In this document: positions 6,201 through 53,500 of the stretch, in pieces
Layout of the letters: each line of letters opens with the position of its first letter
Numbering within the stretch: position 1 is the stretch's first letter
Source: Auanema rhodensis
Lineage: Eukaryota; Animalia; Nematoda
Length of the DNA stretch: 64,000 bases
Direction of reading: 5' to 3'
NCBI GenBank assembly: GCA_964057225.1
Contig: OZ059898.1
Location: 14,818,001 to 14,882,000 of the forward strand
Translations under genes and position numbers: made by a program
Notes under the pieces: generated by a model
Databases searched by the model: none
What the model was told of the DNA's origin: nothing
The model's input: the letters and a program-made list of their open reading frames with translations, nothing else

Positions 6201-6805
6201 AGAGCTGAATTCAAATAATGAAAATTCAAAAGAGAAGATGCCAAAAGATGGCTTCCCATGCCGGGAATCGAACCCGGGCCGCGTGGGTGAAAACCACGAA
6301 TCCTAACCACTAGACCACATGGGACACGTTAACTGTTCTTATGATACTACTTCTTCTATAATTTACCTCGAGGAAGTGAGTAAGCAACAAGGGAAGTAAC
6401 AACGATGAATCGGCCCCGTATTAACTTCTAACAAAACGGTTAAAAGCAGAAAAGAGATTTAGAAGAGAGCTGAATTCAAAATATGAAAATTCAAAAGAGA
6501 AGATGCCAAAAGATGGCTTCCCATGCCGGGAATCGAACCCGGGCCGCGTGGGTGAAAACCACGAATCCTAACCACTAGACCACATGGGACACGTTAACTG
6601 CTCTTATGATACTACTTCTTCTATCATTTACCTCGAGGAAGTGAGTAAGCAACAAGGGAAGTAACAACGATGAATCGGCCCCGTATTAACTTCTAACAAA
6701 AAGATTAAATGCAGAAAAGAGATTTAGAAGAGAGCTGAATTCAAAATATGGAAATTCAGAAGAGAAGATGCCAAAAGATGGCTTCCCATGCCGGGAATCG
6801 AACCC

Positions 6806-6829
6806 GGGTCTGAGACGTTTCGTCGTCTC
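6806..6829. repeat. MULE left TIR
   Basis: GGGTCTGAGACGTTTCGTCGTCTC. Matches the reverse complement of 9406-9429 (GGGTGGCGGACGTTTCGTCGTCTC) at 20/24, with a perfect 16-bp inner core. Confidence 0.9.
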
Positions 6830-7053
6830 CTATTTTTACAACCTCTCCCAAGCAAGCCTAACGGTCGTAAATTATACCACACGTGTTGTACTCTCAGTTT
6901 TTGGTCGTTTAGACTTCTAAAAATTACCCAAAAACTTAAACAGTTCATAAAAAATCAAGGTTTCTAATCTAAACGGCAAGGAGGTTTTTGTGTTAGAAAA
7001 AAAAGATATGGTTCAAAAAATTTATTAGAGTTTAGTTTTTCGAGTTAAATGAT

Positions 7054-9081
7054 TCAAAAATAAGATTTTCTGGTGTTAAACTTCGCCATCTCCTCGACAT
7101 ATGCTATTATTTCTTCTTGATTAGGCAGTCGGTTATTGGAGATGCTCCTAAAGTTTTCAAACTGAACCTCAATCCGTTGTTGCCTCTCAATTACGTTTTT
7201 TCTTTTTTTCCTGGCAGGCTCAACATTCGATGACAAAGCGATCAGGACATGATTAGCCATCAAATTTTCACCATGAAAAAAAGTAATTAATTCAGAAAGA
7301 GGAGGATGAGAGCAAGATAAAATAGTCTTCATTTTACGGTGAAAAGATTCAACATTATTAGATGTACGAAACTGTTTTATGTCCCATTTGCTCCAATAAT
7401 GTCGCAAAGGTCCTTCAATCCATGTTTCATTCACATAACTGATCATTTGAAGACAAGAAGAATATGATGGATGATCAGAAGAAACGGGAGAATTGAGTAA
7501 CCCGGACCGTGAGATAAGATCAGTTTGAAGGAAGAGCAAGCCCAGCAGCCGACCATGCCATTGTTTGATTTCAATGGATTGTTTCTCTGCTTGTGTCAAA
7601 CCCAGTTGAAGAAACCGTCTGTTCAAGCTCTGAGCATAATGAAATGCACATCCTTGAACAGAATTAAAAATAGTTTCAGCTTCCCTTATTACAGCGATCT
7701 CAAAATCACAGATAAAAATAAGGTTTTCAACTATGCAACCAACGTTGGAGAGAGCTAGTGCAATATGTTGAAGAAGCCTTCTATAAGTGAACCTACTCTT
7801 ATTTTTCAAAATGGAATAGAAAAGAGGTACAGTTGTTCCATTTCTGCAACCGCCCATGATGGTATATGTTTGTTCCATATCCAAAGGCTGGTATTTGAAA
7901 CAACCGTCCCCAAGCAAATGAGTTAAACCATTCTGAACAGCTAGTTCCAAACAAAATGTATCAAAATACAAATGAAACTCGCTGTCATGAAAATGCAAGA
8001 ACGTACGACCATTGATAGTTTTAGACAAAGACAGAGGAACATTGGTCATGGATGTTCTTAAGTCTTTACGAGAACTTAAAGCCCTTGTAATAGCTCTACG
8101 TCTACTATCATAGCCACCATGAAACCAAGCAGAGGAAACTTCTTGCTTTTCATGCTCTTCTAACTCAGATTCATGAAATATTTTTTTTATTTCATTGACA
8201 AATAACGAATAAGCTTTCATCTCAAAACATGAGTCTGAACTTTTGATATTCTGAGTTAGAGAGTATGTGATATTTTTGCATTTGTTAATAGAAAACAAAA
8301 ATGGATCACAATGATGGTTTTGAGCAACAGGATTTTCGAGAAATACATTATTTTCTACTTTGATAGAAGTGTATTTACCCAAATGTTTACAACCCGTGCA
8401 ACGATAAATAGAATAAGTTTTTTGAGAACTTTTACTACTGAATTGGTAGCGATACAGCAAGTTTTCAAATTTATATTCTAAACAGGGGTGTACACCCTGC
8501 TTAGAAGGCGCAATGAGAGCGGCGTATGAGTTAGGATTTGCAGATTGCGAAGAAAATGAAGAAGAAGGAGAGGGAACAGAAGAAGAAGGAGAGGGAACAG
8601 AAGAAGAAGGAGAGAGAACAGGTAAAGAAGGAGAGGAAACAGAAGGAGGAGAAGAAGAAAGAGAAGATGACAGTGAAGAATGAACGGCAGAAGAAGAAGA
8701 AGAAGAAGGCTGAATAGAAAGATGTGAAGTAGAAGAAGAGAACAGTGGAGCGCTGTTGACAGTAGGAACAGTAACTGTAGCAACAGATTCAACTGAAGAA
8801 GATGCCGCAGATGAATTTGCTAGAGAAAGAGCAGAAGCAAAATTAACATTTTGCTGCCTCAATGGAGGGATATTGAAAGATGGAAGAGTGAAATTCAAAA
8901 ATGAGAGTGAAGTTACATCATTTGAATAAACTTCAAGATTCTGAGTATTTACCGAAGAATTATTAAAAAAGATAGTTATGTTCTCCGAAGGAACATTATC
9001 AAAAGGCTGAGAAACAAGAACAAATTTACCCTGAGCGTTAATCATCAGAGAAAATGGACAGAAAGTAGAAGGAAAAATCAT
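7054..9081 (-). CDS. MULE transposase: Ser/Pro-rich N-terminus, FLYWCH/WRKY-like Zn-binding domain, DDE catalytic domain. The true start may involve an upstream exon.
   Basis: 675-aa ORF. YRCTGC...NHHC Zn motif. Catalytic motifs LLGDGCF (D1), ICDFE (D2), GCAFH (CxxH) and RTSNNVESFH (E), all typical of MULE transposases. Confidence 0.92.
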   Translation of the reverse strand: MIFPSTFCPFSLMINAQGKFVLVSQPFDNVPSENITIFFNNSSVNTQNLEVYSNDVTSLSFLNFTLPSFNIPPLRQQNVNFASALSLANSSAASSSVESVATVTVPTVNSAPLFSSSTSHLSIQPSSSSSSAVHSSLSSSLSSSPPSVSSPSLPVLSPSSSVPSPSSSVPSPSSSFSSQSANPNSYAALIAPSKQGVHPCLEYKFENLLYRYQFSSKSSQKTYSIYRCTGCKHLGKYTSIKVENNVFLENPVAQNHHCDPFLFSINKCKNITYSLTQNIKSSDSCFEMKAYSLFVNEIKKIFHESELEEHEKQEVSSAWFHGGYDSRRRAITRALSSRKDLRTSMTNVPLSLSKTINGRTFLHFHDSEFHLYFDTFCLELAVQNGLTHLLGDGCFKYQPLDMEQTYTIMGGCRNGTTVPLFYSILKNKSRFTYRRLLQHIALALSNVGCIVENLIFICDFEIAVIREAETIFNSVQGCAFHYAQSLNRRFLQLGLTQAEKQSIEIKQWHGRLLGLLFLQTDLISRSGLLNSPVSSDHPSYSSCLQMISYVNETWIEGPLRHYWSKWDIKQFRTSNNVESFHRKMKTILSCSHPPLSELITFFHGENLMANHVLIALSSNVEPARKKRKNVIERQQRIEVQFENFRSISNNRLPNQEEIIAYVEEMAKFNTRKSYF
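8555..8715 (-). repeat. Low-complexity GAA-rich coding repeat, including a 21-bp unit encoding SSSVPSP
   Basis: gaagaaggagagggaacagaa repeated about 3 times, plus (gaa)n runs. Encodes the poly-Ser/Pro tract of the transposase. Confidence 0.8.
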
Positions 9082-9405
9082 GATGAACGAGAAAAGATGA
9101 GAAAGTGTGAATAAGCAAACTTATCGAAAGAAAAGATAAACTAACAACTATTACAATGAACTCACGTAACTGTTGACTTGAAACTGTTTGATGATAGCCT
9201 GGTTGATAGAACTGTATGTTTATTTTAATTTCTGCTTTTTTCAATTTATAATTTGATGGCACTTCAAGGTATGTAGCCACTTATATCTGACTTCTATAGA
9301 TTTATAGCTTTAATAGCACCCCGAGTTACATGAACACTGACACTTGTCAGCACATTATCATAAAGTTTGCCCTCTAATGATCAGCCTGAACTAGTTCACA
9401 AACTA

Positions 9406-9429
9406 GAGACGACGAAACGTCCGCCACCC
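9406..9429. repeat. MULE right TIR
   Basis: GAGACGACGAAACGTCCGCCACCC, the inverted counterpart of 6806-6829. Confidence 0.9.
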
Positions 9430-12400
9430 ATCGAACCCGGGCCGCGTGGGTGAAAACCACGAATCCTAACCACTAGACCACATGGGACACGTTAACTGTT
9501 CTTATGATACTACTTCTTCTATCATTTACCTCGAGGAAGTGAGTAAGCAACAAGGGAAGTAACAACGATGAATCGGCCCCGTATTAACTTCTAACAAAAC
9601 GGTTAAAAACAGAAAAGAGATTTAGAAGAGAGCTGAATTCAAAATATGAAAATTCAAAAGAGAAGATGCCAAAAGATGGCTTCCCATGCCGGGAATCGAA
9701 CCCGGGCCGCGTGGGTGAAAACCACGAATCCTAACCACTAGACCACATGGGACACGTTAACTGTTCTTATGATACTACTTCTTCTATCATTTACCTCGAG
9801 GAAGTGAGTAAGCAACAAGGGAAGTAACAACGATGAATCGGCCCCGTATTAACTTCTAACAAAAAGATTAAATGCAGAAAAGAGATTTAGAAGAGAGCTG
9901 AATTCAAAATATGAAAATTCAAAAGAGAAGATGCCAAAAGATGGCTTCCCATGCCTGGAATCGAACCCGGGCCGCGTGGGTGAAAACCACGAATCCTAAC
10001 CACTAGACCACATGGGACACGTTAACTGTTCTTATGATACTACTTCTTCTATCATTTACCTCGAGGAAGTGAGTAAGCAACAAGGGAAGTAACAACGATG
10101 AATCGGCCCCGTATTAACTTCTAACAAAAAGATTAAATGCGGAAAAGAGATTTAGAAGAGAGCTGAATTCAAAATATGGAAATTCAGAAGAGAAGATGCC
10201 AAAAGATGGCTTCCCATGCCGGGAATCGAACCCGGGCCGCGTGGGTGAAAACCACGAATCCTAACCACTAGACCACATGGGACACGTTAACTGTTCTTAT
10301 GATACTACTTCTTCTATCATTTACCTCGAGGAAGTGAGTAAGCAAGAAGGGAAGTAACAATGATGAATTGGTCCCGTATTAACTTCTAACAAAACGATTA
10401 AATGCAGAAAAGAGATTTAGAAGAGAGCTGAATTCAAAATATGGAAATTCAGAAGAGAAGATGCCAAAAGATGGCTTCCCATGCCGGGAATCGAACCCGG
10501 GCCGCGTGGGTGAAAACCACGAATCCTAACCACTAGACCACATGGGACACGTTAACTGTTCTTATGATACTACTTCTTCTGTCATTTACCTCGAGGAAGT
10601 GAGTAAGCAACAAGGGAAGTAACAATGATGAATTGGTCCCGTATTAACTTCTGACAAAAAGATTAAATGCAGAAAAGAGATTTAGAAGAGAGCTGAATTC
10701 AAAATATGGAAATTCAGAAGAGAAGATGCCAAAAGATGGCTTCCCATGCCGGGAATCGAACCCGGGCCGCGTGGGTGAAAACCACGAATCCTAACCACTA
10801 GACCACATGGGACACGTTAACTGTTCTTATGATACTACTTCTTCTATCATTTATCTCGAGGAAGTGAGTAAGCAACAAGGGAAGTAACAACGATGAATCG
10901 GCCCCGTATTAACTTCTAACAAAAAGATTAAATGCAGAAAAGAGATTTAGAAGAGAGCTGAATTCAAAATATGGAAATTCAGAAGAGAAGATGCCAAAAG
11001 ATGGCTTCCCATGCCTGGAATCGAACCCGGGCCGCGTGGGTGAAAACCACGAATCCTAACCACTAGACCACATGGGACACGTTAACTGTTCTTATGATAC
11101 TACTTCTTCTATCATTTACCTCGAGGAAGTGAGTAAGCAACAAGGGAAGTAACAACGATGAATCGGCCCCGTATTAACTTCTAACAAAAAGATTAAATGC
11201 GGAAAAGAGATTTAGAAGAGAGCTGAATTCAAAATATGGAAATTCAGAAGAGAAGATGCCAAAAGATGGCTTCCCATGCCGGGAATCGAACCCGGGCCGC
11301 GTGGGTGAAAACCACGAATCCTAACCACTAGACCACATGGGACACGTTAACTGTTCTTATGATACTACTTCTTCTATCATTTACCTCGAGGAAGTGAGTA
11401 AGCAAGAAGGGAAGTAACAATGATGAATTGGTCCCGTATTAACTTCTAACAAAACGATTAAATGCAGAAAAGAGATTTAGAAGAGAGCTGAATTCAAAAT
11501 ATGGAAATTCAGAAGAGAAGATGCCAAAAGATGGCTTCCCATGCCGGGAATCGAACCCGGGCCGCGTGGGTGAAAACCACGAATCCTAACCACTAGACCA
11601 CATGGGACACGTTAACTGTTCTTATGATACTACTTCTTCTGTCATTTACCTCGAGGAAGTGAGTAAGCAACAAGGGAAGTAACAATGATGAATTGGTCCC
11701 GTATTAACTTCTGACAAAAAGATTAAATGCAGAAAAGAGATTTAGAAGAGAGCTGAATTCAAAATATGGAAATTCAGAAGAGAAGATGCCAAAAGATGGC
11801 TTCCCATGCCGGGAATCGAACCCGGGCCGCGTGGGTGAAAACCACGAATCCTAACCACTAGACCACATGGGACACGTTAACTGCTCTTATTATACTACTT
11901 CTTCTATCATTTACCTCGAGGAAGTGAGTAAGCAACAAGGGAAGTAACAACGATGAATCGGCCCCGTATTAACTTCTAACAAAAAGATTAAACGCAGAAA
12001 AGAGATTTAGAAGAGAGCTGAATTCAAAATATGGAAATTCAGAAGAGAAGATGCCAAAAGATGGCTTCCCATGCCGGGAATCGAACCCGGGCCGCGTGGG
12101 TGAAAACCACGAATCCTAACCACTAGACCACATGGGACACGTTAACTGTTCTTATGATACTACTTCTTCTATCATTTACCTCGAGGAAGTGAGTAAGCAA
12201 CAAGGGAAGTAACAACGATGAATCGGCCCCGTATTAACTTCTAACAAAACGGTTAAAAGCAGAAAAGAGATTTAGAAGAGAGCTGAATTCAAAATATGAA
12301 AATTCAAAAGAGAAGATGCCAAAAGATGGCTTCCCATGCCGGGAATCGAACCCGGGCCGCGTGGGTGAAAACCACGAATCCTAACCACTAGACCACATGG

Positions 12401-12895
12401 GACACGTTAACTGTTCTTATGATACTACTTCATCTATCATTTACCTCGAGGAAGTGAGTAAGCAACAAGAGAAGTAACAATGATGAATTGGTCCCGTATT
12501 AACTTCTAACAAAAAGATTAAATACAGAAAAGAGATTTAGAAGAGAGCTGAATTCAAAATATGGAAATTCAGAAGAGAAGATGCCAAAAGATGGCTTCCC
12601 ATGCCGGGAATCGAACCCGGGCCGCGTGGGTGAAAACCACGAATCCTAACCACTAGACCACATGGGACACGTTAACTGTTCTTATGATACTACTTCTTCT
12701 ATCATTTATCTCGAGGAAGTGAGTAAGCAACAAGGGAAGTAACAACGATGAATCGGCCCCGTATTATCTTCTAACAAAACGATTAAATGCAGAAAAGAGA
12801 TTTAGAAGAGAGCTGAATTCAAAATATGGAAATTCAGAAGAGAAGATGCCAAAAGATGGCTTTCCATGCCGGGAATCGAACCCGGGCCGCGTGGG
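9430..12895 (-). repeat. tRNA-Glu(UUC) array, segment 2 (12 full genes at 9681+265n)
   Basis: Same 265-bp unit. tRNA starts at 9681 ... 12596, with a split copy at 12861. Confidence 0.98.
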
Positions 12896-13232
12896 CGTTC
12901 CGTTATGCTCTCACATCGATCCTATAGACCAATAAAGCCTACAAGATGAGTGTGATAGTATTCCAGATGTAGCGGTAGATAAAGAGCATAATGGATAAAC
13001 ATAAGACTCGAGAAAGAAAGGTTTATTATGTCTACATGATTACAATAAGTTATATAAGTCTACATAAAGATATAAAGTGAAAGAGAGCTAAGAAAGGAAG
13101 ACCAACCATCCATAGTCATTCCATAAGGCAAAGCTGAAGTCTGTGTTCCATATGAAGGGCGTGTCGTCCTCTCTCAGCCTCATGTCGTCTGATTCTAATC
13201 CGCCTGCTACGTATTGATTTCCGACTGGAACG
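12896..13232 (-). repeat. 3' LTR of the non-autonomous element
   Basis: CGTTCC...GGAACG, 337 bp, direct repeat of 15804-16140. Minus-strand AATAAA at 13022-13027 and TATATAA near 13049-13055. Confidence 0.92.
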
Positions 13233-13246
13233 TGCCATTTTTTTCG
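13233..13246 (-). other. Putative polypurine tract
   Basis: Minus strand CGAAAAAAATGGCA directly precedes the 3' LTR. Confidence 0.5.
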
Positions 13247-13928
13247 AGTCTATGTCGCGTCCTCGCGAATAGCAAAATATGTGGCTTGTTTCAATCGTAG
13301 CAGAAGGTTTAGTTTTAAAAAATAAAAATTATAATGTTAACATAAAAATAGTAAAGATAAATTACAATATAGTGTTAAACAATATTATCTGAAAATAATT
13401 TAATAAAAATTATTTGAAAATACATGAATATTAAGGAATAAAACAATCTTTTAGAATACCAGGGCTATATTTTGTCAGCGAGAGTGCGCAAAATAGCTTT
13501 TTAGGCACGACGCTGCATGTCTAACTTGTTTGAGTATAGAGAAACAAGAGTCATGCTATATTATCGATGGAGCTAGCATGTTTCTTCAGCGTATTCAAAG
13601 CGAATTGTAATAATAAAAAAAATTGAATTAAATCCCATATAATTTCCGGAATTGAATCATTAACTACTTGATAAGGACTGTTGCTCAGATGAATATGCAA
13701 TATAATGTCTCTTATCTTTCATTTCTTCTTTATTTACGGGAAATTATTTGAAATTGATGAAGTTTTATAATCATATATGCTTTGAAACTGAAATGCTTTT
13801 TGATTATTAGCTTACATCTCGTCTTACTCAAGTTTTTCAATGATATAATAATATTAATAGCTCTGGTTTTTTAAAGAGAGTTGATACAAAATTTTACAAT
13901 AATTCTATCAATCTCGAAATTATTTCTT

Positions 13929-14393
13929 TCATCGTCTTCTTCTTGGTGGTAGCCAATTTTGGTCCGATGGGTCTTCTGGTTCTGTTTCTTCAGTAGAGTC
14001 ATAGTTATCGTTACTATTTATGACTTTTATGATCTCAATATCGCTGTCGTCGTCCGTGTCATAAGTCGTTGTATTTGATCGCGTGTTTTGAGCGATTGTA
14101 TGGTCCATTTTGCGTTTTTTTTTAGCAGTAACTGGTGTTTGTTCTTCCACTATGATGGATGTTTCTTCTCCTCCTGGTGGTACGTAATCCTCGTCGCTTA
14201 ATCGTTCAGTAGGTGAATAAGTGCCTGCACGAGGAGTAAAGAATTTGTCGGTTTTGTGCTCGGCTTTCTGTTCGTCTTCGATTATAGCGATGCTCTGCGC
14301 GCGAGCTCGGCTTCTGGTGAGTGGAGCTGAGTCTCGCAGATCAAAATCAGTTCGTGTACTGAGAGGTACAGCTGATCGGAATCGCTTATCCAC
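13929..14393 (-). CDS. Possible coding remnant or accessory ORF (charged, disordered, NLS-like)
   Basis: 154-aa frame with a GTG start. The frame stays open for about 21 more codons upstream, with no ATG. Motifs PLTRSRAR, KKKRK, DDDSDIEII, PPRRRR. It is the only long frame in the AT-rich interior and is co-oriented with the PBS. Confidence 0.45.
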   Translation of the reverse strand: MDKRFRSAVPLSTRTDFDLRDSAPLTRSRARAQSIAIIEDEQKAEHKTDKFFTPRAGTYSPTERLSDEDYVPPGGEETSIIVEEQTPVTAKKKRKMDHTIAQNTRSNTTTYDTDDDSDIEIIKVINSNDNYDSTEETEPEDPSDQNWLPPRRRR

Positions 14394-15790: not shown

Positions 15791-15803
15791 GGTGGAACCT
15801 CCA
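15791..15803 (-). other. Primer binding site complementary to the tRNA-Gln 3' end
   Basis: Minus strand TGGAGGTTCCACC abuts the 5' LTR. It is the complement of the metazoan tRNA-Gln 3' end ...GGTGGAACCT-CCA. Confidence 0.85.
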
Positions 15804-39121: not shown

Positions 39122-39127
39122 AGTATA

Positions 39128-45200: not shown

Positions 45201-48135
45201 CCATGGACCACATTTTTGTGAGATCAACATCGTCATGTATTTTTGTTGTGCATGTGATTACATTATCCGCGTATGTGGGGTTGTTGTTATCTAAGTCATA
45301 CCTTCCCGATAACGTATATCCAAAGAAAGTGGGGTGAGCGACTAGATTGCAATCTGGCAATTGCATAATTGGTTCATCATAGATGGTACTCGCATGGACT
45401 TCAGCAATGCCCAAGATGATATCAATCTCTATAGGATCATTCAATTTGCGAGATAAGTAGCCAATGTTCTGGCGTATAAAACGCTGATCGGCATTTGTCA
45501 GTCTTAATGGTTGTATGGCTGAAAGAACCTTATCCATTATAACGCATGGGGCAGATATGCACGCTCCATCGTTATTGTAGAGATCGAGCATAATAGCTTG
45601 CGTGTCTTTAAGAAGAAATTGTTCCCCCGCGGTTTCCATTCTCATTCGTACATCTTCATCGAATGGTAATCCCAAGCGGTTGATCAACTCTCTACGTACG
45701 ATAGCTACTTGTGAACCCGAATCCAACAAGGCGTATACATGATGTGGATTATCGTGGCAATCAAATACTGTCACACTGACTACTCCAACGTGGTTTCTTC
45801 TGAATTCAAAGGCCTTGTCATTGACTGGTCCTGATGTATTTGAAATGTGGTCGTAAGGGTAAGCGAGTGCAGTAGCAGTCGAGATATGTTGGCGTGGGGA
45901 GTGAGCTCTGTATTGTTTTCGTTGTGGGTAAGGTGATCTGCTCCGTGAATATGAGGGTGATTTGCTTCTCGATGAGTGTCTCATAGACGCACTGCGGTCT
46001 TTTCTGTTGTTTTCGTTGTTCCGATGAGGTGATCTTTTTGTATTAGCCTCAAAACTTCTGTACGTTTGTGGTGGATGCCGATTCATTCTATCCTTCGAGT
46101 GAGTTCTAGTCCTACTATTACTCCGGGATTGAGAATCGCGTTGACACAGAGACTCATGATGTGTTTTGTCACAGCGGTGACAATTCGGTGCGTGACATCC
46201 AATGGCTGAGTGTGTCTTCGAAAAACATTTGAAGCATAGCTGTTTGGATACAGCTATCTTCTTCCTTTCTTCTACCGATTGAATAGAATAACATTTGGTG
46301 GGAGAATGATTGCCAAGACAGAGATTGCATTTCTGGTTATTGAACTGTTCTCGCCGACTAGTGTGTAGTTGTCCTGCTGCAATATGAACAGTATTGCTAT
46401 TTCTCTGACTCATTGCATTTTTATCGGCTTCTTCAAGCTGCAATGCTTTTGCGGCTTCCGTGATGTATTCAATGATTGACGTAATTGTAGTATGTTGTTT
46501 CGATTTGTATATGCTGTTATAGATGTGTCGAGGTAATTTTGAGAAGAGTATGACGCGAAGCCCTGTGTGATCTACATTAGGACTGTATCGTATCCTCATC
46601 GATATGATTTGATCAGCTTTGCGGATCGTATGTAGTATCGAAGCACTATTGTCTAGTGCTGCCGGTAAGGCTCTCAGTGAATCGTATAGTTTAGAGTCTA
46701 ACATAGAGGGGTTCATGTACTCTTCCATGAGGATGGTCTTTGCCTTACTGTAACTCTCACCAATGCGTGGCAAGCACAGTAAACATTCTTCAGCTGGACC
46801 AGAAAGTCTGTCGAGCAAAATGGAAAACTTTTCAATCTCTGACAAGGGTTGAACATCAATAACTGCTGTGAACAACTCCCAAAATCCAAGAAAGTCTTCT
46901 GGATTACCGTTGAAATGTGGTACTTTAACTGTTGGAAGACGAGGCGTGAGTATTGATGTTTGTACAGTAGGTGGGATCGAAGATTGTCGTGCTATGTTCT
47001 GTTGCATAGTTGACCAATGATCGGGAACATTGTTTGTATGTTGTTCGACTGTAATTGGTCGAGAATCGTAGTGCGCGTGTCTCAATGGTGAGAGAGCTTT
47101 CCGCTTATTAGCTGCTCCAAGTGGGGTTCCAACATTGTCAGCATCAGCTCTAGCTCTTTCCAAGCTATGAGAACCAGTACTCAGATTGTTAAAAGAATGA
47201 ACAAGATCATTTTCTGATATCGGCATTAGGTCATCGTTCAAAAGAGTGGAGTTACTGTTTGGTTCAAGCATTGAAATATCGTGCTGAGGAGATGCGATCA
47301 TAACGTCACTATTGTTTGCTCGAGTAGTGTACACTCGTTTTTGAGTAGGTTGTCTTTGTGTGGAACCGATTTCATCAGAACTTGTGCTTTGTGTTCTGTG
47401 TCGTCGTGTTCTATCTGGTGTGATGTTCAAATGTTTTTGTATTCCAGAAAAGAAACTCATCTCTAAATTTTTTCTGGAGTATTTCATTCTGTTCATGTCA
47501 TTTTGCAATGTTGTTGAGTCATGTACTGTAGAGTCAAATGAACTCTGATAGTCATCGAGTTCATCTCGGCGAAGTTGGATAAGTTGAGTATATTCCTCAA
47601 CTTCGCCTGTGTTCACCATGAGATCTCTCTCATCACAATAGTCCAAAATGCCCTTGATCAGTTTTGCAACTGTGGGCGGATGTTCTTCGCCAATGTCTTT
47701 GGTGACAAGTTGGTCGATTTCATGAGATTTCATGGTCTTATGGGCTTGAGGGTGTTTGGCCAACATCCTTTTATAGCTACCTTGGTATAATTCCAACCAA
47801 GTTGCTGGGTAGTCCACATGGGTGCGTTCCTCGAGCATCACTCGATGTTCGTCTAACTGATCTCGAAGTGATCGGAAGACGTCCCCAACCGGGATGGCTT
47901 TATAATATATACGCATCAAGCTAGGCTTGTGCGTATGTATAAACTCTCGACATCTGTCGATGTCATCAACCGGGGGAAAGATGAATGCTTGATGGTACGG
48001 GAGGATGTCCTCCTTCACCGTGTTGAACAACTTCAACGCGTGAGTTATATTTCTTTTTAAACAACTTAACTGTCTTGCTAAGGCAGTCAGGTTACGAGTT
48101 TCCTTTTCCGATGGAGAAGAGGGACTCATAATCAT
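39259..48135 (-). CDS. BEL/Pao Gag-Pol-Env polyprotein (2958 aa)
   Basis: Gag LPTVKVPHFNG...FWELF (DUF1759-like) plus 3 Zn knuckles and an RS-rich tract. Protease ALLDSGSQ. RT RIVLDAS, SDVEKAF, RVPFGVNASPF, LYVDN. RNase H FVDAS, TIPRLEL, FSDS, NPADHATRG. Integrase HHCC, GIDLAGP, SDNGSNF, GGFYERMVG, FWQRWHNEY. Cys-rich envelope with transmembrane segments. Confidence 0.97.
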   Translation of the reverse strand: MIMSPSSPSEKETRNLTALARQLSCLKRNITHALKLFNTVKEDILPYHQAFIFPPVDDIDRCREFIHTHKPSLMRIYYKAIPVGDVFRSLRDQLDEHRVMLEERTHVDYPATWLELYQGSYKRMLAKHPQAHKTMKSHEIDQLVTKDIGEEHPPTVAKLIKGILDYCDERDLMVNTGEVEEYTQLIQLRRDELDDYQSSFDSTVHDSTTLQNDMNRMKYSRKNLEMSFFSGIQKHLNITPDRTRRHRTQSTSSDEIGSTQRQPTQKRVYTTRANNSDVMIASPQHDISMLEPNSNSTLLNDDLMPISENDLVHSFNNLSTGSHSLERARADADNVGTPLGAANKRKALSPLRHAHYDSRPITVEQHTNNVPDHWSTMQQNIARQSSIPPTVQTSILTPRLPTVKVPHFNGNPEDFLGFWELFTAVIDVQPLSEIEKFSILLDRLSGPAEECLLCLPRIGESYSKAKTILMEEYMNPSMLDSKLYDSLRALPAALDNSASILHTIRKADQIISMRIRYSPNVDHTGLRVILFSKLPRHIYNSIYKSKQHTTITSIIEYITEAAKALQLEEADKNAMSQRNSNTVHIAAGQLHTSRREQFNNQKCNLCLGNHSPTKCYSIQSVEERKKIAVSKQLCFKCFSKTHSAIGCHAPNCHRCDKTHHESLCQRDSQSRSNSRTRTHSKDRMNRHPPQTYRSFEANTKRSPHRNNENNRKDRSASMRHSSRSKSPSYSRSRSPYPQRKQYRAHSPRQHISTATALAYPYDHISNTSGPVNDKAFEFRRNHVGVVSVTVFDCHDNPHHVYALLDSGSQVAIVRRELINRLGLPFDEDVRMRMETAGEQFLLKDTQAIMLDLYNNDGACISAPCVIMDKVLSAIQPLRLTNADQRFIRQNIGYLSRKLNDPIEIDIILGIAEVHASTIYDEPIMQLPDCNLVAHPTFFGYTLSGRYDLDNNNPTYADNVITCTTKIHDDVDLTKMWSMESIGIRDNISIEAEQQGVLSQFNEQVRKTWEGVHVSFPWKENKHALADNYSIALARLRQQFNHAKSNPEMWAKYNEIFQQQLKSNIIEDAPIHPDSSPTYYIPHQAVVKLSSNTTKVRIVLDASSHRRGELSLNDVIHQGPTILPNLTGLLLRSRFGKYMIISDVEKAFHMVHLNNTEKDATRFLWLHDLTLPPEQDNIRVFRFNRVPFGVNASPFLLAGAIQFGLKSHSDTQLTSCIIDNLYVDNLILTFDETSQGVMLYTQCKSAFNDMKMNLREFCTNDKNTMKSIPKHDKAEKVLQKVLGIYWDSHLDTFSLALQMDYTGDSITKRLVLSTAHKTFDPVGWLSPLILLSRHFLQKLWTLGYAWDEPISPDLQREWKQICSSVHGYRYQVPRNIRNDHVNELCIFVDASTIGYGAVGYLRTLDQESHVTGVHFLMAKQRLAPQNKSKSQKTDKNKKQPLTIPRLELLSFFIGCHIIEFLLQESKLNISIVRIFSDSEISLAWVCKPNPDAGIFVDNRVRSCRVIIDKVKDSYNFFIYHVDTDHNPADHATRGLTRENIDKSTWFTGPKFLQTHDKEWEMTRPYTYVEDDSQVLIASTSITTFVDDPSIFRYQSSRLTCLIRTTAYVLRFIQLLQQRRLHRINNDNEIALNPSTISAEEYKEAERVTYIDVQSTVDIEDKRWKHLGLYHDELGVIRCKGRLEHMEAEEDCIHPIFIPDNHPFASIMIRDMHTKLFHAGGNHLRSEIRRRFWLPRLPRKVQNILKQCAVCKKLHGRPFKYPNMSSLPPERVQRSNPFQNCGIDLAGPFNIHDDTRHITEKRWIMLVTCMATRAIHLEVVQDLSASETLLALRRFISRRGSPDLIWSDNGSNFTLCQKIFALIQDPNVDTYLTHHKVTWKFITPLAPWKGGFYERMVGIMKSALRTSLTTSCKAHMFSTIVTEVEQIVNTRPLTYTFNTTTDLSPIRPIDFLQTNTSVTIPDIVLSELPTHLRSRRDCIDRLNNIQKTLDKFWQRWHNEYVVALRATHMLDHKQGHFSTATPKVGTVVLMSDDNTKRNQWKMGLITSIQNTESVRVAEVRTSDGHKLFRPINRLIPLEIPSDNEHHTENRHTQSPHKSDKTVTFKETPEVILLDNEVSSTVVETSTSTGPNTTENVIDPNVITINDDDDIDVITIADDEGENKPQPRKRRRLPSYTHFFIAMILGILVNPMSATNICQFSCIKGGVGISNCGTGHPIRVCARETCVEYNPNTPNFTIVFPAHVVLHDHTFISRHIIDKNDTFALHQLDCPATPFCDMIQCLFCLELLHNPSCFPYAALSATALIIWLILFSILLSIIVIRICSKKFFHIAQYTLFSVWRMITQCLPSHIRSHISIQEERSVLEYVPLSSHKLPRWQKSTPSQRSRQRDRLVHRVGYLFVAIIVIFLIESLVVNACTIVPPSISHVPGNSVSNLSPTHQVNQVSSSTTLHTYDNEVCFTTSHSNRSYANPLTNSHLRIKLMYTRILCTKVSLFFTRHTIVKTESAKRCPHMGSCVGSFCANVRPNTSISELSLANQYPGTSYCSESCGFLSCGCALPTSGCLFYRNFHVPNDNITHEVFYCSRWTPRVFLQITIHTAIENKTETISHVPFLPHSTKIINGYHITLGRITYSDNEILHRRYITSNSRIAVLPHSATFSYSCGKVKTADPFSECTATDTCSCRPAETVENCYCQDNNPNKLYTNNYTLPLSLPSLTMIPKNNLIFAHPISAVDIKMWTNISDVTYEYDNSPTICELKSKDLVGCFDCVTGATTIITCISTSSHIRISCDDEELLLTCNSQGYNNSIRIQSNFSTPSITCTHPCTSATLHLKGNLYYVNEYIGFEQSTHQITNSSFRLLNVEFTIPSFFVPTHLISSLVSFYSDYLKTIVILLSVLITVLGFVTAVIDRVFQLSSTPALLAYLPIQILIIFAIPFRIIFFTIHLLFKIVVRASHSAVAKGTHSQ
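39262..41620 (-). other. Env region of the polyprotein: Gn-like and Gc-like (phlebovirus G2, class II fusion) glycoproteins
   Basis: Signal-like FFIAMILGILVNPMSA, Cys-rich ectodomain, TM ALIIWLILFSILLSIIVI, second signal YLFVAIIVIFLIESLVVNA|C. KRCPHMGSC and CSESCGFLSCGCALPTSGCLFYR match the phlebovirus Gc fusion-loop pattern. C-terminal TM helices. Confidence 0.88.
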
Positions 48136-50556
48136 TTTGTTTAAAAAGAAATATTAATGTTCAAATTAATTTTGTGTTTAATCTAGCTAATTTGTTGATT
48201 GATTATTGAAAATCAACTGAAATAAAGTCCGAATATAATAGCTGTCGATAGAAGGAATAACAATATATAATATAAATAGGAGAAAAAAATGCGAAGATAA
48301 GAAAAGATATGCAAGTAATATAAGCAAATAAGATAAGCAAAATAGTTCACTATTAGAAGGTACAATGAATATTTAGTTGAATATTTGTTAACAGTTTTTT
48401 CTTTGGAGAGTTATACTGTTAGTTTTTTCGTGTAGTTGTTACTGTTTCGTTAAATTACGTGTGTGGAATCTTTTGTAAAAAAGTGTATGTTTTATCTTTT
48501 GAATATATATATATATTTTTTTTTTGTTAGTTAAGTTAGTATATTTTTAAATTTTTTAAAAATGGAGATTGTTCAGGCAAAGATAATTCAATAAGTTTCT
48601 TTCTCTGGTTAAAAAAAAGAAAAATTGGATGATTCACTAGATGAGAAAACAATTTAAGTTGAGAGATTACTGTAGGAAATAGAGAGAAAAAATTGAGTTT
48701 CCCAAAATCGATCAAAAATTGTGAGCAAACTAGCTTTGATGAATTCAGTAAAGTTTTCTGAGTAATTTGATACTAAATATGCTGTTGTTTTTTATCAAAA
48801 AATATAATATCAATATTAATATTAATTGGTTGAAATATAATAAGGATATCCAAAAAGTATTCAAAATATTATTGTTTGATTGATCAGAAAGTATGTGTAT
48901 GAAAAGGATGATTAATTTGAGACAAAAGATTTATTTCTGGACAGATGAACAAAGGAAATTGTATGAGATAACAGATGTGAATGAAATATAAACAATATAA
49001 AATGTGAAATAATAAAATTAAAATAAAACAAATTGAAATTATAAAATAACTTACCAACTTAATGTAAATATATAATTGATACCAGAGAGTATCAATTCAA
49101 ATTCAATAAGCGGTTAAAGTGTTAATGCGAACAAATGAAAACTAACTTGATTCTCCTTGAGGATCCTTGATGTCGATTGTCCTTGTATGGTGAATAGGTT
49201 AGCAGATGGCGTCGGGTGCTGTGGCTGGTTGTAGCGGCGGAATGAATGACCTGTCTGGCAGCTAGGCCGTGTGGGATGTTAAGAGGGAGGAGCTAATCTG
49301 CAAAAAGTATATGTAAGATTATTAAATGAGATAATTTAATGGATTTGAAACAAAACGAGTGGGTTAACTTCTCATAACATTTTAAAATGTTTTGATATTC
49401 CATGTCATTCGATGATGACCTAGATAATGTGTGAGAGATGTTTGCGTGGTGCTAATGGCGCCGCACCAGGTCAATGAACAGATGGCAACATCTTTTGTCT
49501 TTTTTCGCGTATCTTGTCAACATATTTGCTAAAATCGACTTTTTGGTGCAAAATGTTGGAAATATCGCATTTAACCTTTGCTGAGATTTATATTTTATGC
49601 TTTAACATGCGTAGGATGATAATTCGTAGCTCTTTCGTGTCTTATCATTATCTCATCTATGTAGGATGGGATATTATGATGTTTTGTGATTTTTCACAGA
49701 AATTTTCATCTGCGTAAGATTTTAACAATATAGTTAATGTATTTTGTCCTATAGAACGTGGGTGATGATCTTATATAAGATAAAATATATAAATTTTATG
49801 AATTTCATGATTTGGACTCTGACCTTTCTCATTGACCCGTTGGTCGTTACATATGACTCATATGGTTGGAAACAATAGATTTACAGACAATGGATGAATG
49901 AAGAAATTTAAAAACTATAAAACAAGCCGTAAATAGTAAAAACTCGGAACTCTTTCGCATTTTTTTTATATAAACAACACCTACCGAGAGTGCAAGGGTA
50001 CCAAACAAACATCAACAAGTAGGTCAACAGACGTTCCTTGTTGATAGGCTCCTTCCACACATGTTCACAAATAATCGTTGATCTCTAAGATACTGACTCC
50101 TTTACAGATGAGGAAACAGACAGCATTACTCATATAGCAAGGAGACATTGGTCTAAGATGCCTTTTAGTCACCTATTCAATTGATTCACAATTGTTAAAA
50201 TAACTTTTGCACTCGAAGTCTATCAAAACTGTTTACAATGATTATTGAAAGTCACGTAAAATATAAAAGATATAAAAAGGTCTCAAAATCAAAGAATAAA
50301 TGAATAAATAGCGTGTTTAGACGGTAGCTCTGCTATTGCGTAATTCATATCATTGTTTCTCACTGTCCTCAGTCAGTAGAAATAGGATCGCCATAAAATG
50401 TGTTTGCTGGTACTTTGTCTGCATTTTTCTCGTACTCTCGCATATTCTTCCTAGGAAAATACTGTGAAACATAATAAGGGGTGATCAATCCCAGCTGAGT
50501 CACTGCCGGCAAGTTAAAGGAAGTAGCCATTGGGTAATCCAATAGAGTTTATATAG

Positions 50557-50564
50557 CGAACGCA
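50557..50564 (-). other. Remnant of a PBS complementary to tRNA-Gly(UCC)
   Basis: Minus strand TGCGTTCG lies at the exact end of the element. From recall, nematode tRNA-Gly(UCC) ends ...CGAACGCA-CCA, so the full PBS would be TGG-TGCGTTCG with the TGG lost. Confidence 0.55.
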
Positions 50565-50565
50565 G

Positions 50566-53500
50566 AAAAGCAGAAAAGAGATTTAGAAGAGAGCTGAATT
50601 CAAAATATGGAAATTGAGAAGAGAAGATGCCAAAAGATGGCTTCCCATGCCGGGAATCGAACCCGGGCCGCGTGGGTGAAAACCACGAATCCTAACCACT
50701 AGACCACATGGGACACGTTAACTGTTCTTATGATACTACTTCTTCTATCATTTACCTCGAGGAAGTGAGTAAGCAACAAGGGAAGTAACAACGATGAATC
50801 GGCCCCGTATTAACTTCTCACAAAACGATTAAATGCAGAAAAGAGATTTAGAAGAGAGCTGAATTCAAAATATGGAAATTGAGAAGAGAAGATGCCAAAA
50901 GATGGCTTCCCATGCCGGGAATCGAACCCGGGCCGCGTGGGTGAAAACCACGAATCCTAACCACTAGACCACATGGGACACTTTAACTGTTCTTATGATA
51001 CTACTTCTTCTATCATTTACCTCAAGGAAGTGAGTAAGCAACAAGGGAAGTAACAACGATGAATCGGCCCCGTATTAACTTCTAACAAAACGATTAAAAG
51101 CAGAAAAGAGATTTAGAAGAGAGTTGATTTCAAAATATGGAAATTCAGAAGAGAAGATGCCAAAAGATGGCTTCCCATGCCGGGAATCGAACCCGGGCCG
51201 CGTGGGTGAAAACCACGAATCCTAACCACTAGACCACATTGGACACGTTAACTGTTCTTATGATACTACTTCTTCTATCATTTATCTCGAGGAAGTGAGT
51301 AAGCAACAAGGGAAGTAACAACGATGAATCGGCCCCGTATTAACTTCTAACAAAACGATTAAAAGCAGAAAAGAGATTTAGAAGAGAGTTGATTTCAAAA
51401 TATGGAAATTCAGAAGAGAAGATGCCAAAAGATGGCTTCCCATGCCGGGAATCGAACCCGGGCCGCGTGGGTGAAAACCACGAATCCTAACCACTAGACC
51501 ACATGGGACACGTTAACTGTTCTAATGATACTACTTCTTCTATCATTTACCTGAAGGAAGTGAGTAAACAACAAGGGAAGTAACAACGATGAATCGGCCC
51601 CGTATTAACTTCTAACAAAACGATTAAAAGCAGAAAAGAGATTTAGAAGAGAGCTGAATTCAAAATATGGAAATTGAGAAGAGAAGATGCCAAAAGATGG
51701 CTTCCCATGCCGGGAATCGAACCCGGGCCGCGTGGGTGAAAACCACGAATCCTAACCACTAGACCACATGGGACACGTTAACTGTTCTTATGATACTACT
51801 TCTTCTATCATTTACCTCGAGGAAGTGAGTAAGCAACAAGGGAAGTAACAACGATGAATCGGCCCCGTATTAACTTCTAACAAAACGATTAAATGCAGAA
51901 AAGAGATTTAGAAGAGAGCTGAATTCAAAATATGGAAATTGAGAAGAGAAGATGCCAAAAGATGGCTTCCCATGCCGGGAATCGAACCCGGGCCGCGTGG
52001 GTGAAAACCACGAATCCTAACCACTAGACCACATGGGACACGTTAACTGTTCTTATGATACTACTTCTTCTATCATTTACCTCGAGGAAGTGAGTAAGCA
52101 ACAAGGGAAGTAACAACGATGAATCGGCCCCGTATTAACTTCTAACAAAAAGATTAAATGCAGAAAAGAGATTTAGAAGAGAGCTGAATTCAAAATATGG
52201 AAATTCAGAAGAGAAGATGCCAAAAGATGACTTCCCATGCCGGGAATCGAACCCGGGCCGCGTGGGTGAAAACCACGAATCCTAACCACTAGACCACATG
52301 GGACACGTTAACTGTTCTTATGATACTACTTCTTCTATCATTTACCTCGAGGAAGTGAGTAAGCAACAAGGGAAGTAACAACGATGAATCGGCCCCGTAT
52401 TAACTTCTAACAAAACGATTAAATGCAGAAAAGAGATTTAGAAGAGAGCTGAATTCAAAATATGGAAATTGAGAAGAGAAGATGCCAAAAGATGGCTTCC
52501 CATGCCGGGAATCGAACCCGGGCCGCGTGGGTGAAAACCACGAATCCTAACCACTAGACCACATGGGACACGTTAACTGTTCTTATGATACTACTTCTTC
52601 TATCATTTACCTCGAGGAAGTGAGTAAGCAACAAGGGAAGTAACAACGATGAATCGGCCCCGTATTAACTTCTAACAAAAAGATTAAATGCAGAAAAGAG
52701 ATTTAGAAGAGAGCTGAATTCAAAATATGGAAATTCAGAAGAGAAGATGCCAAAAGATGACTTCCCATGCCGGGAATCGAACCCGGGCCGCGTGGGTGAA
52801 AACCACGAATCCTAACCACTAGACCACATGGGACACGTTAACTGTTCTTATGATACTACTTCTTCTATCATTTACCTCGAGGAAGTGAGTAAGCAACAAG
52901 GGAAGTAACAACGATGAATCGGCCCCGTATTAACTTCTAACAAAAAGATTAAATGCAGAAAAGAGATTTAGAAGAGAGCTGAATTCAAAATATGGAAATT
53001 CAGAAGAGAAGATGCCAAAAGATGACTTCCCATGCCGGGAATCGAACCCGGGCCGCGTGGGTGAAAACCACGAATCCTAACCACTAGACCACATGGGACA
53101 CGTTAACTGTTCTTATGATACTACTTCTTCTATCATTTACCTCGAGGAAGTGAGTAAGCAACAAGGGAAGTAACAACGATGAATCGGCCCCGTATTAACT
53201 TCTAACAAAAAGATTAAATGCAGAAAAGAGATTTAGAAGAGAGCTGAATTCAAAATATGGAAATTCAGAAGAGAAGATGCCAAAAGATGGCTTCCCATGC
53301 CGGGAATCGAACCCGGGCCGCGTGGGTGAAAACCACGAATCCTAACCACTAGACCACATGGGACACGTTAACTGTTCTTATGATACTACTTCTTCTATCA
53401 TTTATCTCGAGGAAGTGAGTAAGCAACAAGGGAAGTAACAACGATGAATCGGCCCCGTATTAACTTCTAACAAAAAGATTAAATGCAGAAAAGAGATTTA

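What the first reader, a model, noticed from the sequence alone, without database searches (positions are those of the whole stretch)
6783..50570. Three unrelated transposon classes all hit the tRNA gene itself, all co-oriented: a candidate tRNA-targeting transposon community
Seen: the MULE TSD is tRNA nt 50-58 (B box), the LTR-element TSD is nt 38-41 (anticodon arm), and the BEL junction is 9 bp upstream of nt 1. None falls in the other ~180 bp of spacer, and all three read on the tRNA strand. If sites were random, three hits in ~82/265 bp would have p of about 0.03, but n is only 3. Known: tRNA targeting is established for Ty1/Ty3, Dictyostelium TRE elements and Dada transposons. I do not know of it for MULE or BEL/Pao elements. 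Inference: the redundant array is a safe harbour, like rDNA for R2, reached by Pol III-factor tethering or open chromatin.
Basis: partly seen in the sequence, partly recalled or inferred. Interest (0 to 1): 0.85.

Follow-up and report, generated by a model that had tools for sequence, protein, structure and literature searches.

The report
Three transposons inside a tRNA array
A nematode-like tandem array of about 174 tRNA-Glu genes carries three young mobile-element insertions that do sit in or beside a tRNA gene and point the same way, but three events, one of them rearranged, cannot show that these elements aim at tRNA genes.

Summary
The window is one 265-bp tandem array of tRNA-Glu(TTC): 171 intact genes, all on the minus strand, with three interruptions. 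It is not human. Both transposon proteins have their best matches in rhabditid nematodes.

A 2.6-kb MULE (6806-9429) has a 9-bp TSD covering tRNA nt 50-58. A 3.2-kb non-autonomous LTR element (12896-16140) has a 4-bp TSD covering nt 38-41. Removing either one in silico restores a callable tRNA-Glu gene.

The third interruption (38256-50565) holds an intact 2958-aa gag-pol-env reading frame of the nematode belpaovirus (BEL/Pao, Atlas-like) type. It has no LTR pair and no TSD. One junction lies 9-13 bp upstream of a tRNA; the other lies in the spacer, 115-118 bp upstream.

All three elements read on the tRNA strand.

Both clean sites fall in the GC-richest 25 bp of the unit. Eight loci of the nearest relatives (29-39% identity) show no tRNA association. 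No other copies of these families could be found. Dedicated tRNA targeting therefore remains an untested lead. The likelier reading is tolerated insertion into a redundant array, possibly with a generic site bias.

The parts
1..64000 (-). Tandem array of tRNA-Glu(TTC) genes. The unit is 265 bp: a 72-bp gene plus a 193-bp AT-rich spacer, with a TTTT run 7 bp downstream of the gene. 171 genes are intact and 3 units are interrupted. The array runs off both ends of the window.
   Evidence: ARAGORN, TRF, consensus unit and variant patterns.
6806..9429 (-). MULE (MuDR-superfamily) DNA transposon, 2624 bp. The TIRs are at 6806-6829 and 9406-9429.
   Evidence: TIR found. Removing the element and one TSD copy restores tRNA-Glu.
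6797..6805 (.). Left copy of the 9-bp TSD ATCGAACCC, which is tRNA nt 58-50. The right copy is at 9430-9438.
7054..9081 (-). Uninterrupted 675-aa transposase ORF. D392, D459, C478xxH481 and E578 are conserved with nematode MULE transposases. A Ser/Pro-rich N-terminal region is encoded by a 21-bp tandem repeat at 8558-8708.
   Evidence: Pfam MULE 26.1 bits, just under the 27.6 cut-off. phmmer E = 1.7e-65 to proteins named MULE transposase. Alignment A1. Repeat.
12896..16140 (-). Non-autonomous LTR element, 3245 bp. The 337-bp LTRs are at 12896-13232 (3' LTR) and 15804-16140 (5' LTR), with 3 differences between them. The termini are CGTTCC...GGAACG, not TG...CA. The longest ORF is 154 aa and has no family match.
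   Evidence: Removing the element and one TSD copy restores tRNA-Glu.
12892..12895 (.). Left copy of the 4-bp TSD TGGG, which is tRNA nt 41-38. The right copy is at 16141-16144.
15785..15803 (-). Primer-binding site TGGAGGTTCCACCTCGAAC directly after the 5' LTR. It fixes the element's orientation as minus. From my memory of tRNA-Gln, 13 nt are complementary to a tRNA-Gln-type 3' end.
   Evidence: The tRNA-Gln assignment is recalled, not tested.
38256..50565 (-). 12.3-kb interruption with mismatched flanks. The left junction is 9-13 bp upstream of a tRNA and the right junction is 115-118 bp upstream, in the spacer. It has no TSD and no LTR pair.
39259..48135 (-). Uninterrupted 2958-aa gag-pol-env ORF of the nematode belpaovirus (BEL/Pao) type.
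- DUF1759 gag at aa 408-548.
- RT at aa 1135-1253, with YVDN at aa 1221.
- Peptidase_A17 at aa 1306-1477.
- Integrase zinc domain at aa 1706-1751.
- DUF5641 at aa 1979-2075.
- Phlebovirus_G2 at aa 2441-2722 (window 39970-40815).

The C-terminus ends level with the Haemonchus placei relative.
38702..39121 (-). 139-aa ORF just after env with gag-type zinc knuckles. It is 24-35% identical to the gag region (aa ~330-480) of BEL/Pao proteins. It is not homologous to the extra ORF that the two Ancylostoma relatives tested carry at this position.
38256..38701 (-). 3'-terminal non-coding 446 bp ending in ...ACA against the array. It contains CTAGTCT-type sub-repeats. It could be a 3' LTR, but no second copy exists in the window.
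48136..50565 (-). 2.4-kb AT-rich non-coding stretch (GC about 0.30) upstream of the ORF. It has no LTR, no ORF of 80 aa or more, no RNA-family match and no internal structure. Its origin is unknown.

Best explanation
These are three independent, recent insertions of ordinary nematode mobile elements into a very large, redundant tRNA-Glu array. Losing single gene copies there costs nothing.

The elements are an apparently autonomous MULE, a non-autonomous LTR element and a belpaovirus-like gag-pol-env element. The MULE and the LTR element inserted by their normal chemistry: staggered cuts of 9 bp and 4 bp, giving clean TSDs. The belpaovirus-like copy was later rearranged, or was never a simple integration: one LTR-bearing end and about 105 bp of array are missing.

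Where the elements sit within the 265-bp unit, and their shared orientation, reflect chance. A generic preference for the GC-rich, probably nucleosome-free gene part of the unit may add to this. No evidence points to machinery in these families that recognises tRNA genes.

Shown: the anatomy, TSDs, orientation, youth of the insertions, and the lack of tRNA association in relatives. Inferred: tolerance of the array, and the generic bias.
For: - Clean TSDs, and restoration of a callable tRNA-Glu after in-silico excision.
- The insertions are young: the LTRs differ at 3 of 337 positions, and the 675-aa and 2958-aa ORFs are uninterrupted.
- 171 of 174 units in the window are still intact.
- The third event has no TSD or LTR pair, and its flanks are mismatched.
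- Fair null probabilities are 0.06-0.18 for position alone.
- The gene is 58% GC against 37% for the spacer. Both clean TSDs lie in the GC-richest stretch (unit index 10-35). GC-weighted nulls give 0.34-0.52 per event.
- One C. nassatus MULE relative with definable ends sits in a GC-rich 8-mer within AT-rich, non-tRNA DNA.
- None of 8 relatives' loci has a tRNA gene nearby, and 4 reconstructed empty sites are not tRNA genes.
Against: - Taken at face value, position and orientation together give p of 0.004-0.018 under a uniform null. That is suggestive.
- The belpaovirus-like 3' end lies at about -10. From my knowledge of yeast tRNA genes, not tested here, this is roughly where Pol III starts and where Ty3 integrates.
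- The relatives tested are distant (29-39% identity), so their behaviour says little about these particular families.
- The generic-bias component has no direct support. No chromatin data exist, and no insertion-site profile is known for these families.
Confidence: 0.6

Rival explanations
1. At least one of the three families truly targets tRNA genes. The MULE might recognise the B-box/T-arm sequence, as Dada transposases recognise sites inside small-RNA genes. Or the integrase of the belpaovirus-like or small LTR element might be tethered to the Pol III machinery, as in Ty3.
For: - The MULE TSD is the most conserved part of tRNA genes, nt 50-58.
- One belpaovirus-like junction lies 9-13 bp upstream of nt 1.
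- All three elements read on the tRNA strand.
- Mismatched flanks like those of the third event are also reported for true array-targeting Dada copies (PMC3706591).
Against: - There is only one copy per family.
- Relatives show no tRNA association.
- The MULE fails Dada's defining features: Dada has a 6-7 bp TSD and no TIRs.
- From established knowledge, tethered LTR elements land outside the gene body, whereas the small LTR element is at nt 38-41.
- The belpaovirus-like copy's other junction is in the spacer.
- The two Dada papers read mention no tRNA targeting by MuDR or BEL/Pao elements.
Confidence: 0.2
2. A shared, family-independent cause. Active tRNA genes in the array are nucleosome-free and bound by Pol III factors, while one nucleosome fills the 193-bp spacer. 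Any transposase or integrase would then reach the gene and its start site more easily.
For: - The 72-bp gene plus 193-bp spacer fits one nucleosome per spacer (inference).
- All three candidate sites lie in or within 13 bp of the gene.
- It needs no new property in three different enzyme types.
Against: - No chromatin data exist.
- It does not explain the shared orientation.
- It cannot be separated from a plain GC or sequence preference, or from chance, at n = 3.
- It is unknown whether most copies of such a large array are active at all.
Confidence: 0.17
3. Assembly artefact: the insertions, or the third one's mismatched flanks, come from mis-joined long reads in a repetitive array.
For: The third interruption has no TSD and shifts the array phase by about 105 bp.
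Against: - Two insertions have exact TSDs and restore the gene when removed. A mis-join would not produce that.
- The array variants on both sides of gap 3 appear to be of the same types.
Confidence: 0.03

Closest known systems
Dada DNA transposons (Kojima and Jurka 2013, PMC3706591; Kojima 2022, PMC8869645)
   Same: A DDE transposon sitting inside a tRNA gene of a multicopy family. The transposase has the C/DxxH motif that Dada shares with MuDR. Copies in arrays often have flanks that do not match each other.
   Different: Dada makes 6-7 bp TSDs and has no TIRs, only sub-terminal repeats. [quoted passage not shown] Here the TSD is 9 bp, the TIRs are 24 nt, the site is the B box, only one copy is known, and the nearest relatives are MULE-annotated proteins.
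MuDR/MULE superfamily (Mutator-like elements), nematode branch
   Same: TIRs, a 9-bp TSD, a D..D..CxxH..E transposase, and best hits to MULE-domain proteins of Cylicocyclus, Diploscapter, Cooperia and Ancylostoma.
   Different: It is only 29-33% identical to any known protein. The Pfam score is just under the curated cut-off. It has a Ser/Pro-rich repeat at the N-terminus.
Nematode endogenous belpaoviruses: Atlas virus of Ancylostoma ceylanicum and C. elegans Cer13 (Merchant et al. 2022, PMC9094657)
   Same: A single gag-pol-env polyprotein (2958 aa here, 2828 aa in Atlas) with Pao peptidase, the YVDN reverse-transcriptase motif, integrase plus DUF5641, and a phlebovirus Gc-like envelope domain.
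   Different: Atlas and the relatives read here have identical or near-identical 191-356-nt LTRs and at most about 640 nt between the 5' LTR and the ORF. This copy has no LTR pair, a 2.4-kb AT-rich stretch upstream, a roughly 230-aa longer N-terminus, and a gag-like zinc-knuckle ORF after env. Its pol is only 36-39% identical to the nearest relative.
Ty3 (yeast) and DGLT-A (Dictyostelium) LTR retrotransposons that integrate at or just upstream of the Pol III start site
   Same: One end of the belpaovirus-like element lies 9-13 bp upstream of the mature tRNA 5' end, which is the region those elements use.
   Different: Those are Ty3/gypsy elements of compact genomes. They have TSDs and many copies at the same offset. 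Here there is a single junction, no TSD, the other flank lies in the spacer, and four relatives are not near tRNA genes.
R2 and Pokey in rDNA (array 'safe harbour' elements)
   Same: Mobile elements living inside a redundant tandem array of a Pol I/III-type gene.
   Different: R2 and Pokey occupy one defined site in many units. Here three different elements each occupy one unit, at three different sites.

Membership tests
MuDR/MULE superfamily (gap-1 element) | Terminal inverted repeats | tested here: met
   24-nt TIRs with a perfect 16-nt core: 2 matches against 0.04 expected by chance.
MuDR/MULE superfamily (gap-1 element) | TSD of about 8-11 bp | tested here: met
   9-bp TSD ATCGAACCC. Removing the element and one copy restores tRNA-Glu.
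MuDR/MULE superfamily (gap-1 element) | DDE transposase with CxxH after the second D | tested here: met
   D392, D459, C478xxH481 and E578 fall in invariant or nearly invariant (90% or more) columns of alignment A1 with 9 nematode relatives.
MuDR/MULE superfamily (gap-1 element) | Pfam MULE domain above the curated cut-off | tested here: inconclusive
   26.1 bits against a cut-off of 27.6. However, E = 1.7e-65 to proteins named MULE transposase, and the relatives' gene products read carry PF10551.
Dada superfamily | 6-7 bp TSD | tested here: not met
   The TSD is 9 bp. The criterion is from PMC3706591.
Dada superfamily | No TIRs; short sub-terminal inverted repeats instead | tested here: not met
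   Terminal 24-nt inverted repeats are present.
Dada superfamily | The same site inside a small-RNA gene recurs in many copies | not testable with these tools
   Only one copy is available, and no other copies were found.
BEL/Pao, nematode env-bearing belpaoviruses (gap-3 element) | Pao peptidase (A17), RT, integrase with DUF5641 | tested here: met
   Pfam: A17 133 bits, DUF5641 57 bits, Integrase_H2C2 32 bits. RVT_1 scores 26 bits, below its cut-off.
BEL/Pao, nematode env-bearing belpaoviruses (gap-3 element) | YVDN in place of YxDD in RT | tested here: met
   YVDN at aa 1221. The criterion is from PMC9094657.
BEL/Pao, nematode env-bearing belpaoviruses (gap-3 element) | Phlebovirus Gc-like envelope fused to pol | tested here: met
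   Phlebovirus_G2 214 bits at aa 2441-2722. The C-terminus ends level with H. placei P0001.
BEL/Pao, nematode env-bearing belpaoviruses (gap-3 element) | A pair of LTRs and a 4-6 bp TSD | tested here: not met
   No direct repeat of 20 nt or more joins the two ends, and blastn with word size 7 finds nothing longer than 10 nt. The flanks lie at different array phases. This concerns this copy, not the family.
LTR retrotransposon (gap-2 element) | LTR pair, short TSD, and a PBS after the 5' LTR | tested here: met
   337-bp LTRs about 99% identical (3 differences), a 4-bp TSD, and TGG... directly after the LTR on the minus strand.
LTR retrotransposon (gap-2 element) | gag/pol coding capacity that would assign a superfamily | tested here: not met
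   The longest ORF is 154 aa. There is no Pfam hit and no tblastn hit from 120 BEL/Pao proteins. The element is therefore non-autonomous and its superfamily is unknown.
tRNA-gene-targeting elements in general (Ty3, Ty1, DGLT-A, TRE, Dada) | Most independent copies lie at a fixed offset from, or at a fixed site in, tRNA genes | not testable with these tools
   No further copies of any of the three families could be retrieved.
tRNA-gene-targeting elements in general (Ty3, Ty1, DGLT-A, TRE, Dada) | Nearest relatives share the association | tested here: not met
   None of 8 loci has a tRNA gene within the flanks held, which are 6-10 kb except at L004, where the contig is little more than the element. 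The empty sites of L002, L003, L005 and L006 are not tRNA genes. The relatives are distant, so this is weak evidence.

The most novel reading that the evidence does not exclude
At least one of these families is a dedicated tRNA-gene-targeting element. The likeliest candidates are the MULE, through the B-box/T-arm sequence, and the belpaovirus-like element, at the Pol III start site. Either would be the first such case that I know of for the MuDR or the BEL/Pao superfamily, and it would be in an animal with very large tRNA arrays.
Probability: 0.17. Interest if true: 0.75.

Novelty: new member of a known kind. Interest (0 to 1): 0.35.

Why it matters
Target-specific integration into multicopy RNA genes lets mobile elements persist with little harm to the host, and it is of interest for safe-site gene delivery. 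It is well documented for non-LTR elements, a few Ty-type LTR elements and Dada. A MULE or a belpaovirus that aims at tRNA genes would add a new enzyme class to that list.

What the evidence shows here is more modest. A very large tRNA-Glu array in a nematode-like genome is being hit by several currently or recently active elements, one of which is an envelope-bearing belpaovirus-like element with an intact reading frame. The array is a convenient natural 'target plasmid': a census of insertions across such arrays would give insertion-site profiles for many families at once.

Tried and rejected
1. Finding other copies of the three families.
- Exact look-ups of both large ORFs found nothing.
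- The word-indexed search with the MULE protein came back blank, probably swamped by its Ser-rich repeat.
- The exhaustive search found nothing above 33% identity.
- The pol search found nothing above 39%.
- DNA scans for the MULE TIR and the array spacer in metagenomes, and for the tRNA in prokaryote genomes, found nothing.

2. LTRs for the belpaovirus-like element. Neither the repeat finder nor blastn with word size 7 found any. The 2.4-kb upstream stretch has no internal structure either.

3. A tRNA-like look of the sequence at the end of the env ORF (about 39300-39226). Rfam at E up to 1 found nothing in the whole interruption, so I dropped it.

4. Whether the zinc-knuckle ORF after env is the extra ORF that relatives carry in that position. 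It is not homologous to those of L002 and L003, and it matches only gag regions. Whether it belongs to the element or is a fragment of a second BEL-like element stays open.

5. Dada membership for the MULE: rejected on TSD length and TIRs.

6. A PBS like that of the relatives (TGGTGCATCGGCC). Only a weak look-alike (TGGTGCGGCGCC) is visible near 49470 on the minus strand in the sequence read. It was not pursued.

7. TIR/TSD ends for the MULE relatives L001, L007 and L008: none were found, so their empty sites could not be rebuilt.

8. My first TIR/TSD scan missed the window's own MULE because its seed was too strict. I fixed this before using the scan on relatives.
Full report
**What the window is**

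ARAGORN finds 171 tRNA-Glu(TTC) genes, all on the minus strand, spaced 265 bp apart. Tandem Repeats Finder sees one 265-bp array that runs off both ends of the window. The consensus unit is a 72-bp gene (58% GC) plus a 193-bp spacer (37% GC), with a TTTT run 7 bp after the gene.

Unit variants occur in recurring short orders such as A-H-K-E-D and G-I-O. That is the mark of local unequal exchange.

The array is interrupted three times. The contig is not human. Both large transposon proteins have their best matches in rhabditid nematodes: Haemonchus, Cylicocyclus, Ancylostoma, Necator, Diploscapter and Cooperia. The identities are low enough (29-39%) that the source species or its close kin are evidently not in the protein collections.

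**Interruption 1: the MULE**

Tracking the phase of the array against the consensus places the element at 6806-9429.
- Its ends are 24-nt inverted repeats, GGGT-NNNN-GACGTTTCGTCGTCTC. The 16-nt core is perfect: two matches in the window against 0.04 expected by chance.
- It is flanked by a 9-bp duplication, ATCGAACCC.
- A 12-bp overlap of the array on the two sides resolves into a 9-bp TSD plus a shared GGG that belongs to the TIR. Only that reading puts the two TIRs in register.
- The 675-aa ORF (7054-9081, minus strand) scores 26.1 bits on Pfam MULE, just under the cut-off.
- It matches nematode proteins annotated as MULE transposases at E = 1.7e-65.
- It keeps D392, D459, C478xxH481 and E578 in invariant or nearly invariant columns of the alignment.

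It is a MULE, not a Dada. Dada makes 6-7 bp TSDs and lacks TIRs (PMC3706591).

**Interruption 2: the small LTR element**

The element is 12896-16140.
- Its 337-bp LTRs differ at three positions.
- It has a 4-bp TSD, TGGG, which is tRNA nt 41-38.
- Its termini are CGTTCC...GGAACG rather than TG...CA.
- On the minus strand the LTR is followed at once by TGGAGGTTCCACC.... A primer-binding site must begin with TGG. The plus-strand alternative begins with TGC. So the element reads on the tRNA strand.
- From memory, those 13 nt complement the 3' end of tRNA-Gln. I did not test that.
- The interior has no ORF over 154 aa, no Pfam hit and no similarity to 120 BEL/Pao proteins. The element is non-autonomous and its superfamily is unknown. 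'Three unrelated classes' is therefore unproven for this one.

**Control for interruptions 1 and 2**

Deleting either element plus one TSD copy gives a sequence in which ARAGORN again calls an intact tRNA-Glu(TTC). These are two clean, conventional insertions into the gene body.

**Interruption 3: the belpaovirus-like element**

The 12.3-kb stretch (38256-50565) carries one uninterrupted 2958-aa ORF on the minus strand, 39259-48135.
- Its domains are gag (DUF1759), protease, RT, Pao peptidase A17, integrase, DUF5641 and a Phlebovirus_G2 envelope domain at 214 bits.
- The RT motif is YVDN. That motif and the single gag-pol-env polyprotein are the hallmarks of nematode endogenous belpaoviruses such as Atlas virus (PMC9094657).
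- The ORF aligns to the Haemonchus placei relative right to its last residues, so the envelope end is complete.

This copy is not a simple integration.
- No direct repeat joins its two ends.
- On the left the array stops 9-13 bp upstream of tRNA nt 1. Four bases, TGTT/AACA, could belong to either side.
- On the right the array resumes 115-118 bp upstream of a tRNA, inside the spacer.
- About 105 bp of the unit is missing and there is no TSD.

Relatives read for comparison have 191-356-nt LTRs that are 98-100% identical, and at most about 640 nt between the LTR and the ORF. Where the ends are clear (L005), the termini are TGT...ACA with a 5-bp TSD.

Here the 3' end does finish in ...ACA against the array, so the -9 junction may well be an original integration junction. 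The 5' side is 2.4 kb of AT-rich, structureless DNA with no LTR.

Between env and the 3' end lies a 139-aa ORF with gag-type zinc knuckles. It is not homologous to the extra ORF that the two Ancylostoma relatives tested (L002, L003) carry at that position. I cannot say whether it belongs to the element or is a fragment of a second one.

**Is the pattern more than chance?**

It rests on two choices made after seeing the data.
- The target was widened by 10 bp to take in the third event.
- The junction of the third event that fits was the one counted.

| Version of the test | Probability |
|---|---|
| At least two of three in the 72-bp gene | 0.18 |
| The two clean events both in the gene | 0.074 |
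| Either junction of the third event allowed to count | 0.059 |
| Position plus orientation on the tRNA strand | 0.004-0.018 |

The last row is suggestive, but it is again post hoc.

A uniform null is also the wrong null. Both clean TSDs lie in the GC-richest 25 bp of the unit (index 10-35, local GC 0.67-0.93). Nulls weighted by the GC content of the target site give 0.34-0.52 per event for landing in the gene.

**Do relatives aim at tRNA genes?**

I fetched four MULE loci: L001 and L006 from Cylicocyclus nassatus, L007 from Cooperia, and L008 from Ancylostoma caninum. I also fetched four belpaovirus-like loci: L002 and L003 from A. ceylanicum, L004 from H. placei, and L005 from C. nassatus. 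Flanks were 6-10 kb, except at L004, whose contig is little more than the element.
- ARAGORN finds no tRNA gene in any of them.
- A gene split by an insertion would escape ARAGORN. So I rebuilt the empty sites wherever the ends could be defined (L002, L003, L005, L006). None is a tRNA gene.
- These relatives are distant, so this weakens the hypothesis without refuting it.

**Mechanistic coherence**

The known cases fall into two kinds.
- Factor tethering (Ty1, Ty3, DGLT-A, TRE) puts elements outside the gene body.
- Sequence recognition (Dada) hits a fixed site inside the gene in many copies.

The three sites here are the B box, the anticodon arm and about -10. A 'community' of targeting elements would need three separate mechanisms in three enzyme types. 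A shared cause is more economical. That could be an accessible, nucleosome-free gene with one nucleosome on the 193-bp spacer, or simply a preference for GC-rich DNA. Neither can be tested from sequence, and neither explains the shared orientation.

**Verdict**

The interpretation as dedicated tRNA targeting is an untested lead. I put about 0.17 on at least one family truly targeting tRNA genes.

The best-supported account is tolerated, recent insertions of ordinary nematode elements into a highly redundant array, with position set by chance and perhaps a generic bias.

It is easy with the source assembly and could not be done with the collections available here.

Noticed in passing
window 1-64000: The tRNA-Glu(TTC) array is very large. 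At least 174 units fill the whole 64-kb window and run off both ends. Unit variants recur in short higher-order patterns (for example A-H-K-E-D, G-I-O, C-J-A), which points to ongoing local unequal exchange. I found no report of such arrays in nematodes with one literature query.
   Followed up: partly
window 18434-18519 and 18997-19082: Two units are 298 bp instead of 265 because of the same exact 33-bp tandem duplication in the spacer just downstream of the tRNA. They lie two units apart, so the variant has itself been copied within the array.
   Followed up: no
window 39259-48135 (minus strand): An uninterrupted 2958-aa gag-pol-env reading frame of the nematode belpaovirus type (YVDN reverse transcriptase, phlebovirus Gc-like envelope). 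It is only 36-39% identical in pol to any protein on record and has about 230 extra N-terminal residues compared with its relatives. It is a deep new branch of the Atlas/Cer13-like group.
   Followed up: partly
window 38702-39121 (minus strand): A 139-aa ORF with gag-like zinc knuckles lies directly after env. Relatives in Ancylostoma and Haemonchus also carry an extra ORF between env and the 3' LTR (305, 334 and 245 aa). Those of L002 and L003 are unrelated in sequence to this one; that of L004 gave no hit to the small ORF but was not used as a query itself.
   Followed up: partly
window 12896-13232 and 15804-16140: The LTRs of the small element end in CG...CG with a 6-nt terminal inverted repeat (CGTTCC/GGAACG) instead of the usual TG...CA. 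The PBS appears to match a tRNA-Gln 3' end, whereas the belpaovirus relatives read here use a tRNA-Gly-like PBS.
   Followed up: partly
L006 4845-4852 and 10481-10488 (Cylicocyclus nassatus): The one MULE relative with definable ends has an 8-bp TSD, GCCGGGAA. This is identical to tRNA-Glu nt 65-58 of the window's gene and abuts the window MULE's own TSD. Its flanks are not a tRNA gene. An 8-mer occurring in a 72-nt gene has a chance of about 0.002. This is unexplained. It could hint at a liking for this GC-rich motif, or it could be coincidence.
   Followed up: partly
L005 7193-8762 and 19488-21059 (Cylicocyclus nassatus): The belpaovirus-like element there (9269-19486, 191-bp identical LTRs, TSD CCAAG) sits between the arms of a 1.57-kb inverted repeat that is 98% identical. 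It may have inserted into another element with long inverted ends.
   Followed up: no
window 8558-8708: A 21-bp tandem repeat inside the MULE ORF encodes a Ser/Pro-rich stretch (SSSVPSP-type). It probably caused the blank result of the word-indexed protein search.
   Followed up: partly
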